Below are positions 1,651-21,555 of a stretch of DNA of 64,000 nt, one piece after another. The DNA lies in the IMG/VR virus record IMGVR_UViG_3300027708_000012, positions 281,370 through 345,369 of that record, one strand, 5' to 3'. The notes under the pieces were generated by a model. The model was not told the DNA's origin. It searched no databases and saw only the letters and a program-made list of their open reading frames with translations. Within the stretch, counting starts at the first letter, position 1. Every line of letters starts with the position of its first letter. Both the position numbers and the translations under genes were made by a program.

Positions 1651-1679
1651 ATTATACACTCAATATTTAAACAAGTCAA
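1651..1679 (-). promoter_or_regulatory. sigma70-type promoter for the helicase gene
   Basis: TTGACT-17 nt-TATAAT on minus strand. Confidence 0.75.
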
Positions 1680-1683
1680 CCAT

Positions 1684-1707
1684 AAAGAAACCCGCCGAAG
1701 CGGGTTC
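1684..1707 (-). terminator. Rho-independent terminator after tmRNA
   Basis: GAACCCGC-TTCG-GCGGGTTTCTTT on minus strand. Confidence 0.8.
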
Positions 1708-1716
1708 TACTATTTT

Positions 1717-2080
1717 TGGTGACAAAGCATAGTTGCTTCGCGAGGGCAGTTTTTTAGGCTGCTAATGCAAATTCTGCATCATTGGCAGAAGCCAATGTTA
1801 CTGGAACTTGAAAATACTCGAATGTAGATGTTTTAGCATTTACTTTAATTTGCTTGATTTACAGTCATCGCCTACTGAGTTGCCGTCTTCAATATCTAAC
1901 CCCGTCGAAACCATGGCAGGCCCATCATAAACACACTCAAATCTGAAAGGTGTCGCCTGTGACGCCTTGTGTTTATAACACCACCACTCGGGACTCAAAC
2001 CCGCATGTGTTTATGGTGGACCTGGCGGGAGTCGAACCCGCGTCCGAGATTCCTTCTATCCAAAGGAATTACAACTATTT
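1717..2080 (-). ncRNA. ssrA: Circularly permuted (two-piece) tmRNA
   Basis: Minus strand order: acceptor piece ending GCGGGTTCGACTCCCGCCAGGTCCACCA (CCA at 2014), 90-nt spacer, then 5' piece GGGCCTGCCATGGTTTCGACGGG (1923). Acceptor stem GGGCCTG/CAGGTCC has G3.U70. Tag frame ends ANDAEFALAA* at 1754. Confidence 0.92.
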
Positions 2081-2092
2081 CATTTAACCCAA

Positions 2093-2296
2093 TTACTTGG
2101 GTTGAATATTTGCTGCCTGCAAGCCTTTTTGACCTTGTACCACATCAAATGTCACTGATTGATTCTCTTGCAGAACTTTGAATCCTGATGTTTGAATCGC
2201 TGAGTAGTGTGCGAAAAGATCCTCGCCGCCGCCGTCTGGAGTAATAAACCCAAAACCTTTGGTTTCATTAAACCATTTTACTTTACCTGTTGCCAT
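2093..2296 (-). CDS. cspA: Cold-shock domain protein
   Basis: [21 protein letters not shown]...DLFAHYSAI...GLQAANI; RNP1/RNP2 motifs. Confidence 0.95.
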
Positions 2297-2404: not shown

Positions 2405-2995
2405 ATGGCATTAGTCGACTCAGTATTAAATTTAATTAACAAGCAACCAAAAGATCCCAACGCACCAAAGCCTCTAGTAGGATCACGTAGCGAACGTGAA
2501 GCCAAACTAAAAGACAAAGCAGGTATGGTAATCAGTGTATTTGCACTATTACTTGCTGTCAACAGCTGGTACGGTGGCACACTCAGCAGTAAGGTATTAA
2601 ACAATACCATTGCTTCAAACAATGTATGGGCATTTTATCAAGCTAAAAGTATCAAACAAACTCTAGCAGAACAAAGCCTTGACGATGCTACTTATCGCAA
2701 AGAAACAGAAAAAATGGCTAAATTACAAGCCAAGATCGATCGTTACGAAAGCGATCCTAAAACAGGCGAAGGCAAAAAAGAATTAATGGAAAAGGCACGT
2801 GCGTTAGAAGCAGAGCGTGACGAAGCTAAAAAACGTAGCCCATGGATTGGTTATGCCAGTACAATGTATCAATTGAGTATTGTGGTGTTGTCAGCAAGTA
2901 TTCTTGCTGTTAGCATGAGCATGTTCTGGGGTAGCTTCTTTGTTGCTGGTTTAGGTGTATTGTTGTCAGCACAAGGCGTATACTTATTTTTCTAA
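2405..2995 (+). CDS. DUF4337-like membrane protein
   Basis: Start likely ATG 2405 after GGGAG and TAAATA; TM helices with WAFYQAKSIKQ and YQLSIVVLSASIL motifs. Confidence 0.7.
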   Translation: MALVDSVLNLINKQPKDPNAPKPLVGSRSEREAKLKDKAGMVISVFALLLAVNSWYGGTLSSKVLNNTIASNNVWAFYQAKSIKQTLAEQSLDDATYRKETEKMAKLQAKIDRYESDPKTGEGKKELMEKARALEAERDEAKKRSPWIGYASTMYQLSIVVLSASILAVSMSMFWGSFFVAGLGVLLSAQGVYLFF

Positions 2996-3003
2996 TTTAA
3001 AGA

Positions 3004-3106
3004 ACCCACCTTAGGGCACGTTAGTCGTCACGGTTATAGGCGTCCGAGCAATTGAACTGCACCTCGTTAGTGTGCCGGGAGATAAAGTAACTCCCACTTT
3101 TTTGGG
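3004..3106 (+). ncRNA. Candidate structured RNA ending in a terminator
   Basis: GGCACGTTAG...TTAGTGTGCC stem with G-U pairs, internal hairpins, then GGGAG-ATAAAGTAA-CTCCC-ACTTTTTT. Confidence 0.4.
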
Positions 3107-3116
3107 TAAATATATA

Positions 3117-3821
3117 ATGAATCCAATTATATATACCCTGATAGTAACACATATTACTATCGTCTGTGTTACCCTATTTTTACATAGAGGTCAAGCACAC
3201 AAAGGAATAGAATTCCACCCAATTCTAAGTCATTTTATGCGATTCTGGTTGTGGTTAACAACTGGAATGATTACTCGTCAATGGGTAGCTATACATCGTA
3301 AACATCATGTGTTCAGTGATAAGGAAGGCGATCCGCATAGTCCGCATATATTTGGCATTTGGAATATAGTATTTAAGGGTGTTACATTTTACGCTCGAGA
3401 AGGACGTAACGCTCAAACTATGATGAGTTACGGAAAAGGTACTCCTAATGATTGGATTGAACGTAATTTGTATACCCCATATAATTTCTACGGAATTCTT
3501 TTAATGTTGATTATAGATCTTGTATTATTTGGTCTGTGGGGATTAGTAATATGGGGTATACAAATGGTGTGGATACCTTTTTGGGCAGCAGGAGTTATTA
3601 ACGGAATAGGACATTGGTATGGATATCGTAACGGTACTACAAGGGATGGGAGTCGTAACATTAGTAACATTGGCATACTTATTGGTGGCGAAGAGTTGCA
3701 CAATAATCACCACTTGGATCCAGCGAGTGTTAAACTAAGTCGGCGCTGGTTTGAATTAGATATAGGCTGGATGTGGTTAAGTTTATTTAGATTTTTAAGA
3801 CTAGCTAAACTTACACGTTAA
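3117..3821 (+). CDS. Membrane fatty acid desaturase (delta-9/DesA type)
   Basis: His boxes HRGQAH, HRKHH, HNNHH; GEELHNNHH and WFELDIGW; ATG 3117 directly after TAAATA. Confidence 0.92.
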   Translation: MNPIIYTLIVTHITIVCVTLFLHRGQAHKGIEFHPILSHFMRFWLWLTTGMITRQWVAIHRKHHVFSDKEGDPHSPHIFGIWNIVFKGVTFYAREGRNAQTMMSYGKGTPNDWIERNLYTPYNFYGILLMLIIDLVLFGLWGLVIWGIQMVWIPFWAAGVINGIGHWYGYRNGTTRDGSRNISNIGILIGGEELHNNHHLDPASVKLSRRWFELDIGWMWLSLFRFLRLAKLTR

Positions 3822-3822
3822 C

Positions 3823-4581
3823 TTATAGATTACTTGCGTATTTTGTTGCTGTTGGAGCACGTTTAGCGGCTTGTACTTTGGCATTAGCTGGTCTTTCAAA
3901 CTTGTGTGTCCATGCTCTACTGGCGGCATCTGCACTAGGGTACTCTCGTCCTATATATCTTGCACCGTCTGGCTCGGATAATGCAAAATCAATTTGTCCT
4001 TGCCAGTTATCTTTCCAACTTGGACCTAATTTTTGTTTTAATTGCGCAAATCGAGGACCGTTATGTTGAAATAATCCTCCACTAGGTAAGCCGTTAGAAT
4101 CAATAGTTTCAACTCCTGATCTAAAGCCAGACTCGTGTGCTATGTTAGCCATCATGCCTGCAATCTGTGTTATGCTCATATTCCATTTTTGTTTGCAATG
4201 ACGAGCGATATCCCGCCAAGGAACAGAACCTGCAACTTGTTTAATTTCAACTTTAGGTTTAGCTACTGGCGGCGCCTTTGCTGTTTGTACTGGTGGCAAG
4301 GATTTAGGCTTGGCCGCTGGTGTAGCAACTGCTGTTGCTTTGGCTTTTGCAATATCTGCAGGACCAGTCATTCTTGTGTCAACGCCCGGAGGGCCAAATG
4401 GTGCTCTGCTAGGTATAGATTTTGGATCTAGTTTACCTGATCCTATTTTAGCAATATCGTCTTCTGCTTCTAGTGCATCAGCAAACTGTTGAGCTGGCGA
4501 ATTAGTTTTTGGTGCTAGGCCTTTAGCTTGTAACAGATTGTCTAAATCGTCTTCTTTAATAGTAAATTCGTTTGCTCTCAT
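3823..4581 (-). CDS. Phage tail lysozyme (Phage_lysozyme2-like) domain protein
   Basis: AGMMANIAHESG...GLFQHNGPR...QIDF...FERPA. Confidence 0.8.
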   Translation of the reverse strand: MRANEFTIKEDDLDNLLQAKGLAPKTNSPAQQFADALEAEDDIAKIGSGKLDPKSIPSRAPFGPPGVDTRMTGPADIAKAKATAVATPAAKPKSLPPVQTAKAPPVAKPKVEIKQVAGSVPWRDIARHCKQKWNMSITQIAGMMANIAHESGFRSGVETIDSNGLPSGGLFQHNGPRFAQLKQKLGPSWKDNWQGQIDFALSEPDGARYIGREYPSADAASRAWTHKFERPANAKVQAAKRAPTATKYASNL

Positions 4582-6346: not shown

Positions 6347-7057
6347 TTAACTCCAATATCGATTATGGTATAAACTATCCCAGTAGGCTTTGTTATTGCG
6401 ATTGATAAAATTCTTAACAAGGTACTTGCCCATGCCAAGGTATCCCATCTTTTTAAATCTACGCGAGTCTTGCCCAAGGTGGTGGCGAACAATCCTAAAC
6501 TTCCTAGGATTGTATTTTTTAGATAAAAAGTAATCTTCACTTGTTAATAAGTTCTCAGGAAACCCGCCGTACTCTTCAAACTTATCTCTGCGTGTGAGCA
6601 TAAACGCACCGACCGCAAATGGACTAAAGAATTTTAGCGTATGGTTAATTAAATTAAATGCTGTGAATCCAATCTTTGCCCTAATATCCTTATCATAGCA
6701 TTTGATATTCAATCCAATAAGGTCTAGTTTTTTACGTTCAATTAATCTAACAGCATCACGAATAACAGTGGGTTTAAAAAATCGTACATCAGCATCAATG
6801 AATAAGATATAAGGTGTAGTGACTAGTCTAGCACCATTGTTTTTAGCAATACTAACAGGGCCGCCATCGATAATTTCTACATTTAAGTTACCCTTCATCA
6901 ATTGAATAACTTCACGTGTATTGTCCGTTGAACAGTCTGCAATGATGATTCTAGTGCTACCTATCATTTGATTGCGTAGGTGTGTTAATAGATAGGGAAT
7001 ATAGTTTTCCTCATTCTTACAAGGAATTACAATAGTAATCTTATCGCTGAATATCAT
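6347..7057 (-). CDS. Glycosyltransferase family 2
   Basis: TIVIPCKNEE, IIADCSTDNT, LFIDADV, SEDYFLS motifs. Confidence 0.9.
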   Translation of the reverse strand: MIFSDKITIVIPCKNEENYIPYLLTHLRNQMIGSTRIIIADCSTDNTREVIQLMKGNLNVEIIDGGPVSIAKNNGARLVTTPYILFIDADVRFFKPTVIRDAVRLIERKKLDLIGLNIKCYDKDIRAKIGFTAFNLINHTLKFFSPFAVGAFMLTRRDKFEEYGGFPENLLTSEDYFLSKKYNPRKFRIVRHHLGQDSRRFKKMGYLGMGKYLVKNFINRNNKAYWDSLYHNRYWS

Positions 7058-7224
7058 TGTTTCTTGCATTCGCCTACTACCTTAAAACTTTTAAACTTTA
7101 GTTGCCACTTCAATGTGCTTAGGACTTGCTCGCAAGTCTTTTGATCGTGGAATGTTAGTTCTACTTTTCCTGGCTGATCCGTCGGATCGTTTACGTGTAT
7201 CGCTATTAGGATCAATAACCACAT
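7054..7224 (-). CDS. Small exported protein (56 aa)
   Basis: MWLLILIAIHVNDPTDQPGKVELTFHDQKTCEQ...GECKKQ*; AGGAG RBS; ATGA overlap with GT2. Confidence 0.6.
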   Translation of the reverse strand: MWLLILIAIHVNDPTDQPGKVELTFHDQKTCEQVLSTLKWQLKFKSFKVVGECKKQ

Positions 7225-18265: not shown

Positions 18266-18806
18266 CTTTATACTCGACAATTTCCATCATTTGTTGGAAG
18301 AACCTTGTGGCGAAATCAAAACATACTTTAGCTTCGTCTGCCATGTCGTCGCTTATACGTTCTCTAATAGCTGCCTTAAGTGCTTCAGGATCTTCAAATT
18401 GGTACATGGTGCCCGACCCAGGAACACGTTTGGCAATCATCTGTCCACCAGCTAGATCACCCATGTGTCGCACATATAAGTGCGCCATTAGTTTTTTTGG
18501 ATTATCTCTGATACTCATGATATAATCCATATATTCTTGGACTATAGGAAGTAGTTCTGCATCGTCCTCATCTGTCCATAGTTCTTTATAGTCCGCATTA
18601 ATTTTTGGTGCTCTGCGAATATCAGGCATGCCGGCCAGCATACCGGTTGCCATAGCACACACTTCTAGTATCTCATATTGCGGATGTTGATTTTTTAAAT
18701 AAGTTGCATACAGTTTAGGATTTATTGTGCCTGAAAACAAAATTTTTACAAATTCCTGTCTTTCAGCATTGGTATGCGCTTCTTTAGTTAAATCTCGTAA
18801 GCTCAT
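18258..18806 (-). CDS. hemO: Heme oxygenase
   Basis: LRDLTKEAHTNAE; AHLYVRHMGDLAGGQMI; EAKVCF. Confidence 0.92.
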   Translation of the reverse strand: MSLRDLTKEAHTNAERQEFVKILFSGTINPKLYATYLKNQHPQYEILEVCAMATGMLAGMPDIRRAPKINADYKELWTDEDDAELLPIVQEYMDYIMSIRDNPKKLMAHLYVRHMGDLAGGQMIAKRVPGSGTMYQFEDPEALKAAIRERISDDMADEAKVCFDFATRFFQQMMEIVEYKDE

Positions 18807-19105
18807 TCTTCCTCCAATTTAATTTGGAGAGGAAAATTATTTTCTCTAGCTGTAGATGTTGTTTCTACGGCCTTAGCCTCGGCAATTTCAAAACTATAAA
18901 TTCCCGCTACTCCACTTCCAGTCTCGTGAATTTGAAGCATAATGTCTCTGGCCGAATCAGTTGAATGCCTAAAGATATTGGATAAAATTGATATCACAAA
19001 CTCCATCGGGGTTACATCGTCATTAAGTATAATGACCTTCCAACGTTTTGGTTCACTGATTACTACTTTAATTTTCTCGTCAATTGCGATATCTGTACTT
19101 GACAT
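18803..19105 (-). CDS. clpS: ATP-dependent Clp protease adaptor ClpS
   Basis: WKVIILNDDVTPMEFVI...MLQIHETGSGVAGIYSFEIAEAK...FPLQIKLE. Confidence 0.95.
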   Translation of the reverse strand: MSSTDIAIDEKIKVVISEPKRWKVIILNDDVTPMEFVISILSNIFRHSTDSARDIMLQIHETGSGVAGIYSFEIAEAKAVETTSTARENNFPLQIKLEEE

Positions 19106-19147: not shown

Positions 19148-19579
19148 TTATTTAACTGTAATGATACGTGGCTTCAGTGATTCTGGTACAATACGTTCAA
19201 TCCTAATGATTAACATACCGTCCTTTACTTCAGCGTCTTTGATTTCCATGTACTCAGCAAGAGTCCATGTCTGTTCAAAGTTACGGCTAGCAAGACCTCG
19301 ATGTAAATACTCTTTGTCTTCTGCTGAAATATCAGTTTGCATACCGCGAACAACTAATTGATCTTGGTCTACTTCAACTGTAATTTGATCTTTGCTGAAA
19401 CCTGCTACAGCTACTTCAATTGCATAATCTGTGTCACTATATTTTACAATATTATGTGGCGGATAATTATTTGATTGTTGCTGTAATCTTTGATTAAAGA
19501 TTTGATCAAATCCAACTAAAGCTCTACTTAGTTGTGCAAAGTCCGCTGGACTCACTGTTTTTAATTGCATTGTTGCCAT
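19148..19579 (-). CDS. Small heat-shock protein Hsp20/IbpA
   Basis: YPPHNI, IEVAVAGF, YLHRGLASRNF, DGMLII, VPE motifs. Confidence 0.95.
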   Translation of the reverse strand: MATMQLKTVSPADFAQLSRALVGFDQIFNQRLQQQSNNYPPHNIVKYSDTDYAIEVAVAGFSKDQITVEVDQDQLVVRGMQTDISAEDKEYLHRGLASRNFEQTWTLAEYMEIKDAEVKDGMLIIRIERIVPESLKPRIITVK

Positions 19580-19647: not shown

Positions 19648-21555
19648 TTACTTTTTGTCAGTAGGGTCAACCTCTGTGAAAGCCGCATTAACTGACTGGC
19701 CTTCTTCAGGTTGTACTGGTGCTGATTGCGCTGCACTTTCTGCAGCTTGCTTCTTGGCCATAACTGGACCTGCTGCCTCAAAAAATGTTTCAACTGATTT
19801 TTGAATAACATCTTTGTCGTCCCCTGCGCAAGCAGTTTCTACTGCTTTAACAGCATCGTCAAACTTAGTCTTTTCTTCTTCAGTCAATTGATCTTTGTAT
19901 GTATCATAGTCTTTCTTGATACTGTGTGTAGTACCTTCAGCATTGTTACGTGCTGTGATTAATTCTGCTTGTTTCTTATCTGCTTCGGCATTTTCCTCAG
20001 CTTCTTGAACCATGCGTTTGATCTCAGCTTCTGTCAATCCGCTATCTGACTTGATAGTGATTTTGTTTTCTTTGCCGGTCTTTTTATCCCTGGCACTTAC
20101 ATTTAAAATACCGTTTGCATCGATATCTAATGTAACTTCAATCTGTGGCATGCCACGTGGTGCAGGATCAATACCTTCCAAGTTAAACTCGCCAAGCGAT
20201 TTATTGTACTTGAATAAGTCACGTTCGCCCTGAGCAACCTTAATAGTTACTGCTGGCTGATTGTCATCTGCTGTACTAAATGTTTGGCTATGTTTGGTCG
20301 GGATAGTTGTGTTTTTAGCAATCAGCTTGGTAAACACACCGCCCATTGTTTCAATACCTAGTGTCAATGGAGTAACGTCCAACAACAATACGTCTGTCTT
20401 GTCGCCAGCTAGAACAGCGCCTTGTACTGCGGCACCAGCGGCAACTGCTTCGTCTGGGTTAACGTCTTTACGTGGAGCCTTACCAAACAGTTTCTCAACT
20501 GCTTCTTGTACTTTAGGCATACGTGTTTGACCACCAACTAGAATAACTTCGTCGATGTCTGCGGCGCTAACTTTAGCATCTGCCATAGCAACTTTACATG
20601 GCTCAATTGAACGCTGGATCAGTCCGTCTACCATTGCTTCAAACTTAGCACGGCTGATAGTTACATTCATGTGCTTAGGACCGTTTGCATCTGCTGTAAT
20701 GTAAGGCAAGTTAACACTTGTACTTGCGGCTGTAGATAATTCAATCTTGGCTTTTTCAGCAGACTCTTTCAAACGTTGTAATGCAAGAACGTCTTGCTTC
20801 AAATCAACTCCGTTGTCTTTCTTGAACTCGTCTACCAAATAGTCCATGATAGCTTGGTCAAAGTCTTCACCGCCTAGGAATGTATCGCCGTTTGTTGACA
20901 ATACTTCAATTTGCTTGTCGCCATCAATGTTAGCGATTTCAATGATTGAAATATCAAATGTACCACCACCCAAGTCATAGACTGCAATCTTGCGATCTTT
21001 CTTGTCTGCTTTGTCAACACCATAAGCCAATGCGGCCGCTGTCGGCTCGTTGATAATACGTAGAACTTCTAAGCCTGCAATACGTCCGGCATCTTTAGTA
21101 GCTTGACGCTGGCTATCGTTGAAGTAAGCTGGAACTGTAATAACAGCTTGGGTCACTGTTGTACCTAAATAGTCTTCAGCAGTTTTTTTCATTTTGCGAA
21201 GTACTTCAGCTGATACTTGCTGTGGTGCAAGTTTTTCGCCGTTTGCTTCGATCCAAGCATCACCGTTGTCTGCTTTAATAATGCTGTAGGGCATCAAGTC
21301 AATATCTTTTTGCACAGCAGCTTCGTCAAACTTGCGACCAATAAGGCGCTTGCTGGCGTAAATTGTATTTTTTGGGTTTGTGACTGCTTGTCGTTTTGCT
21401 GTTGCACCAACTAGGATTTCGTCCTTTGTATATGCAATGATTGATGGTGTTGTTCTTGCGCCTTCGCTATTTTCAATAACTTTTGCTACTCCATTTTCTA
21501 GGATAGCTACGCAACTGTTTGTTGTACCTAAATCGATACCGATGATTTTACTCAT
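19648..21555 (-). CDS. dnaK: Chaperone DnaK (Hsp70)
   Basis: [35 protein letters not shown]; full length 635 aa. Confidence 0.98.

What the first reader, a model, noticed from the sequence alone, without database searches (positions are those of the whole stretch)
1754..1837. Apparently extended 27-residue tmRNA tag
Seen: the typical resume context TAAAT-GCT at 1837 opens AKTSTFEYFQVPVTLASANDAEFALAA*, i.e. a canonical 10-aa ANDAEFALAA tag preceded by 17 extra residues with a hydrophobic core (FEYFQVPV). Inference: the extension could add a chaperone- or adaptor-binding site and reroute tagged proteins; the same genome encodes DnaK and ClpS.
Basis: partly seen in the sequence, partly recalled or inferred. 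Interest (0 to 1): 0.7.

Follow-up and report, generated by a model that had tools for sequence, protein, structure and literature searches.

The report
Phage tmRNA with conserved long tag
A 345-kb freshwater phage carries its own two-piece ribosome-rescue RNA (tmRNA) whose degradation tag is 27 residues instead of the usual 10, and the extra 17 residues are a conserved, translated peptide module shared by dozens of related uncultured phages but not found in the bacteria sampled.

Summary
Window 1663-2106 (minus strand) is a complete circularly permuted (two-piece) beta-type tmRNA gene in a 345,369-bp IMG/VR phage record. ARAGORN calls the same 27-residue tag.

The resume codon is GCU at 1837, not GCC at 1786.
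- It follows the U(-5)A(-4) context, which is invariant in 78/78 related phage tmRNAs.
- It lies 22 nt after the PK1-position hairpin, as in short-tag relatives.

The extension is translated.
- In 34 unique extended ORFs (8 length classes) the conserved start and the conserved ..AA-stop hairpin share one frame with 0 stops; the other frames carry 65 and 66.
- Substitutions are mostly synonymous (pN/pS 0.21 in the largest subgroup).
- No conserved RNA helix spans the extension.

About 80 viral loci give 57 unique extended peptides sharing A-[NK]-A-[DNS]-T-[FG]-[ED]-[FYV]. All 31 sampled Burkholderiales tags are 10 aa.

The phage has ClpA, ClpP, ClpS, DnaK and a small heat-shock protein, but no SmpB, SspB or Lon.

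What the extension does is untested. My best inference is a second recognition module of a bipartite degron. No paper found describes it. I rate it a new variant of a known kind, of moderate to high interest.

The parts
1663..2106 (-). Whole permuted (two-piece) tmRNA gene as called by ARAGORN
   Evidence: ARAGORN tmRNA*. Rfam RF04321 125.9 bits over 1754-2076 and RF01850 106.1 bits over 1686-2128.
2014..2076 (-). Acceptor piece: 5' strand of helix P2 (from 2076), T-arm (2025-2041), 3' strand of the acceptor stem plus encoded ACCA (2014-2024)
   Evidence: Rfam alignment and coordinates. The acceptor 3' strand pairs with GGGCCUG and gives a G3-U70 wobble (read directly).
1924..2013 (-). Intervening segment between the two pieces, presumed to be removed during maturation (inferred)
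   Evidence: It lies between the encoded CCA end and the 5' G of the acceptor stem. Its length and sequence vary among relatives (joints). Processing itself is not shown.
1684..1923 (-). Coding piece: acceptor 5' strand GGGCCUG (1923-1917), P2 3' strand, PK1-position hairpin, tag ORF, stop hairpin, 3' helix, terminator
1862..1877 (-). PK1-position hairpin (CAGU-loop-ACUG)
   Evidence: RNAalifold consensus helix with compensatory changes. The resume codon lies 22 +/- 1 nt downstream in both short- and extended-tag relatives.
1838..1843 (-). Resume context GUAAAU (U at -5, A at -4)
   Evidence: U-5 and A-4 are invariant in 78/78 unique related phage tmRNAs. In E. coli the equivalent A86 is essential for frame choice (PMC2481249).
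1787..1837 (-). Resume codon GCU (1837-1835) plus the 17-codon extension AKTSTFEYFQVPVTLAS
   Evidence: In frame, stop-free and conserved at peptide level in relatives.
1757..1786 (-). Canonical decapeptide module ANDAEFALAA
   Evidence: It matches the RF01850 consensus tag and the 10-aa tags of bacterial and short-tag phage relatives.
1780..1797 (-). 7-bp hairpin inside the ORF at the extension/decapeptide junction; GCC 1786 lies in its 3' arm
   Evidence: Present in the RNAfold minimum-energy structure. L096 carries a compensatory pair of synonymous changes and L003 a G-U pair (sequences). It is restricted to the window's closest relatives.
1746..1762 (-). Stop hairpin with UAA (1756-1754) in its loop
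   Evidence: RNAalifold helix with 3 compensatory changes in 11 sequences.
1684..1707 (-). Intrinsic terminator (GC-rich hairpin plus U run)
   Evidence: Terminator scan and a covarying helix.
2093..2296 (-). cspE-like cold-shock gene that ends 17 nt before the acceptor piece; probably co-transcribed (inferred)
   Evidence: NCBIfam CspE 110.6 bits. No promoter-like site between csp and the tmRNA. A Csp ORF sits beside the tmRNA in 32 related loci.

Best explanation
This is a functional, phage-encoded two-piece (circularly permuted, beta-type) tmRNA.

Shown:
- The gene has an intact alanine-type tRNA-like domain.
- The resume codon is GCU at 1837. It follows the invariant U(-5)A(-4) context at the standard distance from the PK1-position hairpin.
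- The ORF therefore encodes 27 residues, or 28 counting the alanine carried by the tmRNA.
- The 17 extra residues belong to a conserved peptide module found in a large family of uncultured, mostly huge, freshwater phages. That module is under purifying selection at the amino-acid level.

Inferred:
- The RNA is charged by host AlaRS and delivered by host SmpB, because the phage encodes no SmpB.
- It rescues ribosomes stalled on broken host or phage mRNAs during infection.
- It appends a bipartite degron. The C-terminal ..FALAA end is the usual ClpXP/ClpAP handle. The N-terminal part is rich in aromatic residues and prone to form a beta-strand: an AN-x-x-T-F-E-Y start that resembles the adaptor-binding half of a canonical tag, followed by a linker. 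I infer that it supplies a second recognition or spacing element for an adaptor or protease. Candidates are an SspB-type adaptor, the double-ring ClpA that the phage encodes, or host Lon.

I put translation of the extension at about 0.9. I put the 'second recognition module' function at about 0.35.
For: - Gene identity.
- tRNA-like domain features (G3-U70, T-arm, ACCA): read directly, coordinates.
- Resume site: the upstream block (PK1 hairpin, 22 +/- 1 nt, then GUAAAU|GCN) is the same in short- and extended-tag relatives. U-5 and A-4 are invariant in 78/78. The alternative site has C-5/U-4 and lies inside a hairpin arm. In E. coli, A86 sets the frame four nucleotides downstream (PMC2481249).
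- Translation: 34 unique extended ORFs in 8 length classes are all multiples of 3. Stops in frames 0/1/2 number 0/65/66.
- Purifying selection: in the FTGN subgroup pN/pS is 0.21 and differences by codon position are 0.064/0.062/0.244. Window versus L003 shows 4 synonymous and 1 non-synonymous change.
- The same peptides occur on three different PK1 backbones.
- RNAalifold finds no conserved helix across the extension, while flanking helices covary.
- Short-tag relatives are not longer elsewhere, so length compensation does not explain the insert.
- Distribution: 44 + 38 viral loci and 57 unique peptides with a shared N-terminal motif. All 31 sampled Burkholderiales tags are 10 aa.
- A close extended-tag relative appears at word depth about 200 in a freshwater metatranscriptome.
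- Phage proteostasis genes: ClpA, ClpP, ClpS, sHSP and DnaK are present; SmpB, SspB and Lon are absent.
- Known tag biochemistry: the ec-SsrA tag holds binding sites for SspB, ClpX and ClpA; the engineered SspB-dependent DAS+4 tag adds four residues (SENY) to the native tag; Mollicute tags are read mainly by Lon (PMC9382460).
Against: - There is no direct evidence of expression, processing or tagging for this phage. The RNA-library contigs that match it exactly cover neighbouring genes, not clearly the tmRNA.
- The function of the extension is not tested.
- ClpA and ClpS occur equally in short-tag relatives.
- No extension-specific neighbouring gene was found.
- The complex prediction with phage ClpS, the ClpA N-domain and the DnaK substrate-binding domain gave no answer.
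- The three peptide subgroups differ in net charge (acidic, neutral, strongly basic), which argues against one simple shared binding partner.
- Within the window's own subgroup the overall pN/pS is only 0.70; it is low only between close pairs.
- The host is unknown.
Confidence: 0.7

Rival explanations
1. Translation resumes at GCC 1786, so only the canonical 10-residue tag is made. On this view the 51 nt upstream are an untranslated spacer or structure.
For: The RF01850 alignment places the consensus tag at GCC 1786 by opening a 59-nt insertion. The decapeptide alone looks like a complete bacterial tag.
Against: GCC 1786 lacks the invariant U-5/A-4 context; it has C-5/U-4. It lies about 73 nt from the PK1 hairpin rather than 22 and sits in the 3' arm of a 7-bp hairpin. 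This view does not explain frame conservation across 8 length classes with 0 stops against 65 and 66. It also does not explain the excess of synonymous changes or the family members whose extension is followed by no AND-type decapeptide.
Confidence: 0.04
2. The extension is translated but functionally neutral. It would be a tolerated relic of an in-frame duplication or insertion after codon 2, carried along in one phage lineage.
For: The N-terminal AN-A-[DN]-T-F resembles a diverged copy of the ANDxxF half of a canonical tag. Intermediates with 2-5 extra residues exist: XacN1 ANANTFDYALAA, and the ANAANDEVYALAA type. In E. coli the tag template can be changed with little effect on rescue (PMC2481249). 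Most extended tags sit in one clade.
Against: Purifying selection on the extension in the FTGN subgroup (pN/pS 0.21) is stronger than on its own C-terminal ten residues (0.57). The first 5-8 positions are conserved across 57 unique peptides. The peptides are kept on divergent RNA backbones, and a second tag type sits in another clade.
Confidence: 0.13
3. The insert is selected at the RNA level rather than for its peptide. Possible reasons are the loop length needed for passage of a pseudoknot-poor two-piece tmRNA through the ribosome, a protein-binding site, or the local hairpin.
For: A 7-bp hairpin with compensatory changes exists in the window's closest relatives. Two-piece tmRNAs have few structural elements.
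Against: No helix is conserved across the extension in 11 relatives. Variation concentrates at third codon positions. Short-tag relatives on the same backbones are not longer elsewhere: median coding piece 188 versus 225 nt.
Confidence: 0.08
4. The gene is inactive as a tagger. It would be a decaying copy, or it would act only through its tRNA-like domain, for example by titrating host SmpB as proposed for the TLD-only RNA of mycobacteriophage DS6A.
For: The phage has no SmpB of its own. A TLD-only phage form is known (PMC4131195).
Against: All parts are intact and score above the Rfam cut-offs. The ORF, stop hairpin and resume context are conserved in about 180 related loci. Coding constraint on the tag is not expected for a decoy.
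Confidence: 0.03

Closest known systems
Betaproteobacterial two-piece (permuted) tmRNA, Rfam RF01850 / RF04321 (Sharkady and Williams 2004, cited from PMC11915505)
   Same: The gene order is the same: acceptor piece, intervening segment, coding piece. The tRNA-like domain, PK1-position hairpin, UAAAU|GCN resume context, ANDxxFALAA end and stop hairpin all match. Scores are above both cut-offs.
   Different: It is encoded by a phage. It scores far lower than bacterial members (106 bits against 160-296). It carries a 17-codon insertion after codon 2 of the tag ORF. All 7 bacterial permuted examples and the 24 standard ones sampled have 10-aa tags (the 4 permuted ones include one already counted).
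Extended ssrA tags of Mollicutes (Mesoplasma/Mycoplasma), read by Lon
   Same: The tag is much longer than 10 residues. The precedent shows that extra tag sequence can carry determinants for a different protease (PMC9382460). That these tags are about 27 residues with multipartite Lon determinants is from my own knowledge of Gur and Sauer 2008 and Ge and Karzai 2009.
   Different: There is no sequence similarity. The Mollicute tags end in NYAFA, whereas this one keeps the canonical ..FALAA ClpX/ClpA end. Those are one-piece bacterial tmRNAs. Neither Lon nor ClpX was found in this phage record, and the host's proteases are unknown.
Other phage-encoded tmRNAs (mycobacteriophage Bxz1 group, Bacillus phage G, OM43 phage Melnitz two-piece ssrA, huge-phage tmRNAs)
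   Same: A complete ssrA gene in a large lytic-type phage, near tRNA genes, with a presumed role in keeping ribosomes available (PMC4131195; PMC9004378; PMC7162821).
   Different: None of these papers reports a conserved tag extension. Melnitz carries an alphaproteobacterial-type RNA behind a glutamine riboswitch. Some huge phages also carry SmpB, which this one lacks.
Xanthomonas jumbo phage XacN1 (AP018399.1), unannotated permuted tmRNA
   Same: It is the closest cultured relative found. The RNA type is the same (RF04321 123 bits, RF01850 108 bits) and the tag starts ANANTFDY, which is the N-terminal motif of the extension.
   Different: Its tag is only 12 residues, with the motif joined directly to ALAA. 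XacN1 has no ClpS or ClpA. Its host is a gammaproteobacterium.
Engineered DAS+4 ssrA tag (a four-residue insertion, SENY, added to the native tag sequence)
   Same: An adaptor-type N-terminal element and a protease-type C-terminal element are separated by added residues (PMC9382460).
   Different: It is artificial and adds only four residues. Here the inserted sequence is itself conserved, and no SspB is known for this system.

Membership tests
tmRNA, permuted/two-piece form (Rfam RF04321; beta type RF01850) | Covariance-model score at or above the curated gathering score | tested here: met
   RF04321 125.9 bits (cut-off 47); RF01850 106.1 bits (cut-off 84).
tmRNA, permuted/two-piece form (Rfam RF04321; beta type RF01850) | Circular permutation: the 3' half of the tRNA-like domain (T-arm, CCA) is encoded upstream of the 5' half and the tag ORF | tested here: met
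   Acceptor piece at 2076-2014 precedes the coding piece at 1923-1684 on the minus strand. ARAGORN flags the gene as permuted.
tmRNA, permuted/two-piece form (Rfam RF04321; beta type RF01850) | Alanine identity: 7-bp acceptor stem with G3-U70, discriminator A, CCA end | tested here: met
   GGGCCUG (1923-1917) pairs with CAGGUCC (2024-2018), giving a G-U pair at position 3, followed by ACCA (read from the sequence; coordinates).
tmRNA, permuted/two-piece form (Rfam RF04321; beta type RF01850) | Resume codon (GCN) preceded by the conserved upstream context with U at -5 and A at -4, a short distance after PK1 | tested here: met
   GUAAAU|GCU at 1843-1835. U-5/A-4 are invariant in 78/78 relatives. 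The distance from the hairpin is 22 +/- 1 nt. The role of A86 is taken from PMC2481249.
tmRNA, permuted/two-piece form (Rfam RF04321; beta type RF01850) | Short ORF ending in hydrophobic residues (..ALAA), with the stop codon in a hairpin loop | tested here: met
   The ORF ends ..FALAA-UAA. The stop hairpin at 1762-1746 covaries. The ORF is 27 codons rather than the modal 10.
tmRNA, permuted/two-piece form (Rfam RF04321; beta type RF01850) | Maturation into two base-paired RNA pieces | tested here: inconclusive
   Only assembled contigs of RNA libraries could be laid. They show relatives' tmRNA sequence at high depth but no molecule ends.
tmRNA, permuted/two-piece form (Rfam RF04321; beta type RF01850) | Works with SmpB | not testable with these tools
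   No SmpB is found in the phage record. The partner would have to be the host's, and the host is unknown.
Mollicute-type extended, Lon-directed ssrA tag | C-terminal NYAFA-type motif recognised by Lon | tested here: not met
   The tag ends ..EFALAA; the motif is as described in PMC9382460. I therefore treat this family as an analogy only, not as membership.
Mollicute-type extended, Lon-directed ssrA tag | Tag much longer than 10 residues with extra determinants upstream of the C-terminal end | tested here: inconclusive
   The length is met (27 aa) and the upstream part is conserved. Whether it is a protease determinant was not tested.
SspB-type bipartite ssrA degron | N-terminal AANDxxY adaptor site plus C-terminal LAA ClpX site | tested here: inconclusive
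   The decapeptide ANDAEFALAA has both elements. The extension start A-K-T-S-T-F, like the family consensus A-N-A-D-T-F, keeps an aromatic residue at the matching position. No SspB is present in the phage, and the host's complement is unknown.

The most novel reading that the evidence does not exclude
Phages of this lineage have evolved their own tag 'dialect'. In this reading, the conserved N-terminal peptide module marks proteins rescued by the phage tmRNA as distinct from those tagged by the host tmRNA. It would then direct them to a different fate. One candidate fate is preferential engagement by the phage-encoded double-ring ClpA-ClpP machine, despite ClpS. Another is tandem adaptor binding. 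Either would turn host quality control into a phage-controlled recycling route. The second, strongly basic tag type (GEVTVSGK.. / VKVTV..), found on unrelated backbones, would then be an independent solution to the same need.
Probability: 0.3. Interest if true: 0.8.

Novelty: new variant of a known kind. Interest (0 to 1): 0.62.

Why it matters
Why large phages carry tmRNA genes is an open question. Proposed answers are maintenance of the hijacked ribosome pool, recycling of amino acids, and sensing of host state.

A tag module that is specific to phages, conserved as a peptide and not found in the sampled bacteria argues that the fate of the tagged proteins matters to the phage, and not only ribosome release.

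It also gives a concrete handle for experiments. The 27-residue and 10-residue versions can be compared directly in degradation and pull-down assays.

Natural extended or bipartite degrons are also useful as orthogonal degradation tags in synthetic biology, as the Mesoplasma tag has been.

Finally, the family shows a weakness of automatic tools. ARAGORN chose a later, downstream start in 3 of the related loci (L003, L108, L082). The beta_tmRNA model aligns the window's tag to the wrong start.

Tried and rejected
1. Extension-specific partner by gene content. ClpS and ClpA-like genes are present in both extended-tag and short-tag relatives, so they do not discriminate.
2. Extension-specific neighbour gene. 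ORFs of 101 loci were clustered. Only Csp (23 extended versus 9 short) and two small clusters (8:1 and 7:1) lean towards extended loci, which fits shared ancestry; none is exclusive.
3. Complex prediction. The tag was tested against phage ClpS, ClpA residues 1-150 and the DnaK substrate-binding domain. The score was 0.02, verdict 'no answer', so it is not evidence either way.
4. Expression and processing. Logan contigs of lake metatranscriptomes show relatives' tmRNAs, including an extended-tag one at depth about 200. For this phage only neighbouring genes match exactly. No molecule ends are visible, so two-piece maturation is not shown.
5. Bacterial occurrence.
   - The genome-contig scan with an extension pattern stopped at 120 rows, almost all chance matches in AT-rich genomes. 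The only real hit is a 2-kb contig binned into a Dehalococcoidia MAG, probably a phage fragment.
   - The pattern was not found in 400 sampled Gammaproteobacteria.
   - These are samples, not proof of absence.
6. RNA-length compensation was rejected.
7. A paralogous peptide motif elsewhere in the phage genome was not found.
8. Literature. No paper or tmRNA-database supplement held in the library contains these peptides or describes extended phage tags. Sharkady and Williams 2004 is not held.
9. Cultured close relatives. The GenBank phage collection holds none beyond the T-arm, except XacN1.

Full report
**What is there.** The window is the last 64 kb of a 345,369-bp IMG/VR virus record with a CheckV completeness of 94% and a GC content of 38%. 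Rfam confirms the gene with two models. tmRNA_permuted scores 125.9 bits (cut-off 47) and beta_tmRNA scores 106.1 bits (cut-off 84).

The anatomy, read from the sequence with coordinates, is as follows.
- **Acceptor piece, 2076-2014.** It holds one strand of helix P2, the T-arm at 2041-2025, and the acceptor 3' strand plus ACCA at 2024-2014.
- **Intervening segment, 2013-1924.**
- **Coding piece, 1923-1684.** It starts with GGGCCUG, which pairs with the acceptor 3' strand and gives the G3-U70 alanine identity pair.
- **PK1-position hairpin, 1877-1862.**
- **Resume context GUAAAU, 1843-1838.**
- **Tag ORF, 1837-1757.**
- **UAA stop, 1756-1754,** in the loop of a hairpin spanning 1762-1746.
- **A 3' helix and an intrinsic terminator, 1707-1684**.

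A cspE-like gene (2296-2093) ends 17 nt upstream of the acceptor piece. No promoter-like site lies between the two, so co-transcription is likely but not shown.

**Where translation resumes.** The two Rfam alignments disagree. RF04321 aligns the consensus UAAAUGC to position 1837. RF01850 instead opens a 59-nt insertion so that the consensus tag aligns to GCC 1786. Comparative data settle the question.

A scan of viral contigs with the acceptor 3' end returned 119 loci, of which 101 hold permuted tmRNAs.
- In these loci the block 'PK1 hairpin, 22 +/- 1 nt, then (G/A)UAAA(U/C)|GCA' is the same whether the tag is 10 or 23-33 residues long.
- At the called resume site U(-5) and A(-4) are invariant in 78 of 78 unique sequences.
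- In E. coli the five nucleotides upstream set the frame, and A86 (position -4) is the key, almost universally conserved determinant (PMC2481249).
- GCC 1786 has C(-5)/U(-4), lies about 73 nt from the hairpin, and sits in the 3' arm of a 7-bp hairpin (1797-1780).

The insertion therefore lies inside the ORF, after codon 2, and not in front of it.

**Is the extension translated?** Several independent lines say yes.
- **Frame.** Among 34 unique extended ORFs in 8 length classes (72-102 nt including the stop), the conserved start context and the conserved ..AA-stop hairpin are always in the same frame with no stop between them. The other two frames carry 65 and 66 stops, in 33 and 30 of the 34 sequences.
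- **ARAGORN's alternative calls.** In L003 and L108 ARAGORN chose a later start, but both are open from the conserved context and then give window-like tags. L082 also starts two codons further upstream than called.
- **Substitution pattern.** In the largest subgroup (the ..FTGN.. type, 17 unique sequences) differences by codon position are 0.064/0.062/0.244 and pN/pS is 0.21. That is lower than for the last ten codons of the same tags (0.57). The window differs from its close relative L003 by 4 synonymous and 1 non-synonymous change in the extension.
- **RNA structure.** RNAalifold on 11 relatives recovers the PK1 hairpin, the stop hairpin, the 3' helix and the terminator, all with compensatory changes, but finds no conserved helix across the extension. 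The 1797-1780 hairpin is confined to the window's nearest relatives. There it is kept by paired synonymous changes (L096) or by a G-U pair (L003).
- **Backbones.** The same peptides occur on three different PK1-region backbones.
- **Length.** Short-tag relatives are not longer elsewhere. The median coding piece is 188 nt against 225 nt, so a pure RNA-length requirement does not explain the insert.

**How widespread it is.** A second viral scan, using a pattern from the start of the extension, found 38 further extended-tag tmRNAs with other acceptor sequences. Together the scans give about 80 loci and 57 unique peptides of 23-33 residues.
- The first positions are strongly conserved: A (57/57), N/K, A (50), D/N/S, T (54), F or G, E/D, F/Y/V.
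- Three types follow: TFEYFQVPV.. (the window's type), TFDFSAMSFTGNTV.., and a basic type that looks like a beta-hairpin (GEVTVSGKNVKF.. / VKVTV..GF.F).
- The C-terminal end is LAA in 36 of the 57. The rest end in LAV, FAV, VAA, IAA, AFA, VLA or MAA.
- On a tree built from the non-ORF parts of the RNA, 30 of 34 extended forms fall in one clade. The basic type sits among short-tag backbones. The tree needs at least 8 changes of state, against 26.5 for shuffled labels. This points to one long-lived lineage plus a second origin or a transfer.
- Contigs range up to 383 kb.

**Bacteria.**
- In 151 sampled Burkholderiales genomes only 3 have a permuted beta-type tmRNA above the cut-off, and 4 of 61 do in one family.
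- All 31 bacterial tags read from that sample are 10 residues long.
- The extension pattern was not found in 400 sampled Gammaproteobacteria.
- In the truncated scan of species genomes the only real hit is a 2-kb contig binned into a Dehalococcoidia MAG.

These are samples, so the claim is 'not found in those searched', not 'absent'.

The closest cultured carrier is Xanthomonas jumbo phage XacN1. Its unannotated permuted tmRNA encodes ANANTFDYALAA, which is the N-terminal motif joined directly to ALAA.

**Context in the phage.** The record has 29 tRNA genes on the same strand, 7-22 kb upstream of the tmRNA.
- **Not found:** SmpB, SspB and Lon.
- **Present:** a ClpA of 758 aa (TIGR02639, 881 bits), a bona fide ClpP, ClpS (window 18803-19105), an IbpA-like small heat-shock protein (19148-19579) and DnaK (about 19756-21546).

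However, ClpA and ClpS also occur in short-tag relatives. No neighbouring gene is specific to extended-tag loci. A complex prediction of the tag with ClpS, the ClpA N-domain and the DnaK substrate-binding domain gave no answer.

**Expression.** Lake metatranscriptome contigs hold relatives' tmRNA sequence at high depth. One is an extended-tag form (..KRIEVAVALN..) at word depth about 200. For this phage only neighbouring genes match exactly. Contigs show no molecule ends, so expression of this copy and its two-piece maturation remain inferred.

**Mechanism.**
- **Shown:** a complete phage tmRNA gene, the position of the resume codon, and a conserved, selected peptide extension.
- **Inferred from established trans-translation biology:** host AlaRS charges the RNA. 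Host SmpB delivers it to ribosomes stalled on broken mRNAs during infection. The nascent chain receives Ala plus 27 residues, and the ribosome terminates at UAA.
- **Inferred, with low confidence:** the tag works as a bipartite degron. The ..FALAA end is the classical ClpX/ClpA handle. The N-terminal AN-x-x-T-F-E-Y start resembles the adaptor-binding half of a canonical tag (AANDxxY, aromatic residue at the same position). The aromatic linker, which is prone to form a beta-strand, could separate the two sites; the engineered SspB-dependent DAS+4 tag likewise carries four added residues. Alternatively it could add a determinant for another machine. The Mollicute tags read by Lon are the precedent (PMC9382460).

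The differing net charge of the three peptide types argues against a single simple partner.

**Comparison and novelty.** The RNA passes every testable membership criterion for a permuted beta-type tmRNA. It differs from bacterial members by its phage origin, its much lower model score and the 17-codon insertion. Long tags are known in Mollicutes and phage tmRNAs are known. I found no paper, and no database supplement held here, that describes a conserved tag extension in phage tmRNAs. I rate it a new variant of a known kind.

**Verdict.**

| Item | Result |
|---|---|
| Observation | confirmed |
| Extended tag is translated | about 0.9 |
| Adaptor/chaperone 'rerouting' function | plausible but untested, about 0.3-0.35 |
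| Interest | 0.62 |

Noticed in passing
window 18803-19105 (-), 19148-19579 (-), about 19756-21546 (-); also G000 181509-183785 and 231617-232207 (outside the window): The phage carries a full proteostasis set. ClpS, an IbpA-like small heat-shock protein and DnaK lie in one minus-strand cluster. A ClpA of 758 aa and a bona fide ClpP lie elsewhere. SmpB, SspB and Lon were not found. ClpA-like genes of 746-784 aa recur in related huge phages.
   Followed up: partly
window 2093-2296 (-): A cspE-like cold-shock gene ends 17 nt before the tmRNA acceptor piece. A Csp ORF sits next to the tmRNA in 32 related loci, which suggests a conserved csp-tmRNA transcription unit.
   Followed up: partly
L280 (Xanthomonas phage XacN1, AP018399.1, about 37.2-37.6 kb): This cultured jumbo phage has an unannotated permuted beta-type tmRNA (RF04321 123 bits) with the tag ANANTFDYALAA. 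It lies 1 kb downstream of two annotated suppressor tRNAs.
   Followed up: yes
L006, L012, L051, L065, L079 (related huge-phage loci): tRNAs with a CTA anticodon (amber suppressors, labelled tRNA-Pyl by ARAGORN) lie within a few kb of the tmRNA in several relatives. Suppressor-driven read-through would create more non-stop events and so more need for tmRNA. No such tRNA was found in the window's own phage.
   Followed up: no
G000 261-276 kb (outside the window, upstream of the tmRNA): An array of 28 of the record's 29 tRNA genes lies on the same strand as the tmRNA, so the tmRNA sits at the end of a translation-RNA region.
   Followed up: no
L003 10.6-10.8 kb, L108 2.7-2.9 kb, L082: ARAGORN chooses a later start in these loci, although the frame is open from the conserved GUAAAU|GCN context. 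Automatic tag calls therefore under-report extended tags. The RF01850 alignment of the window makes the same kind of error.
   Followed up: yes
window 1780-1797 (-): A 7-bp hairpin lies inside the tag ORF, at the junction of the extension and the decapeptide. It is kept by paired synonymous changes in L096 and by a G-U pair in L003. Its role is unknown.
   Followed up: partly
window about 2405-2995 (+), 3072-3821 (+), 3823-4581 (-), 6347-7069 (-): Neighbouring genes are a DUF4337 protein divergent from csp, a fatty-acid desaturase family protein, a phage tail lysozyme domain protein and a family-2 glycosyltransferase.
   Followed up: partly
L138 / L242 (2,038-bp contig binned in a Dehalococcoidia MAG): This is the only 'bacterial' record found with an extended-tag tmRNA (basic type). 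The tiny contig is probably a mis-binned phage fragment.
   Followed up: partly
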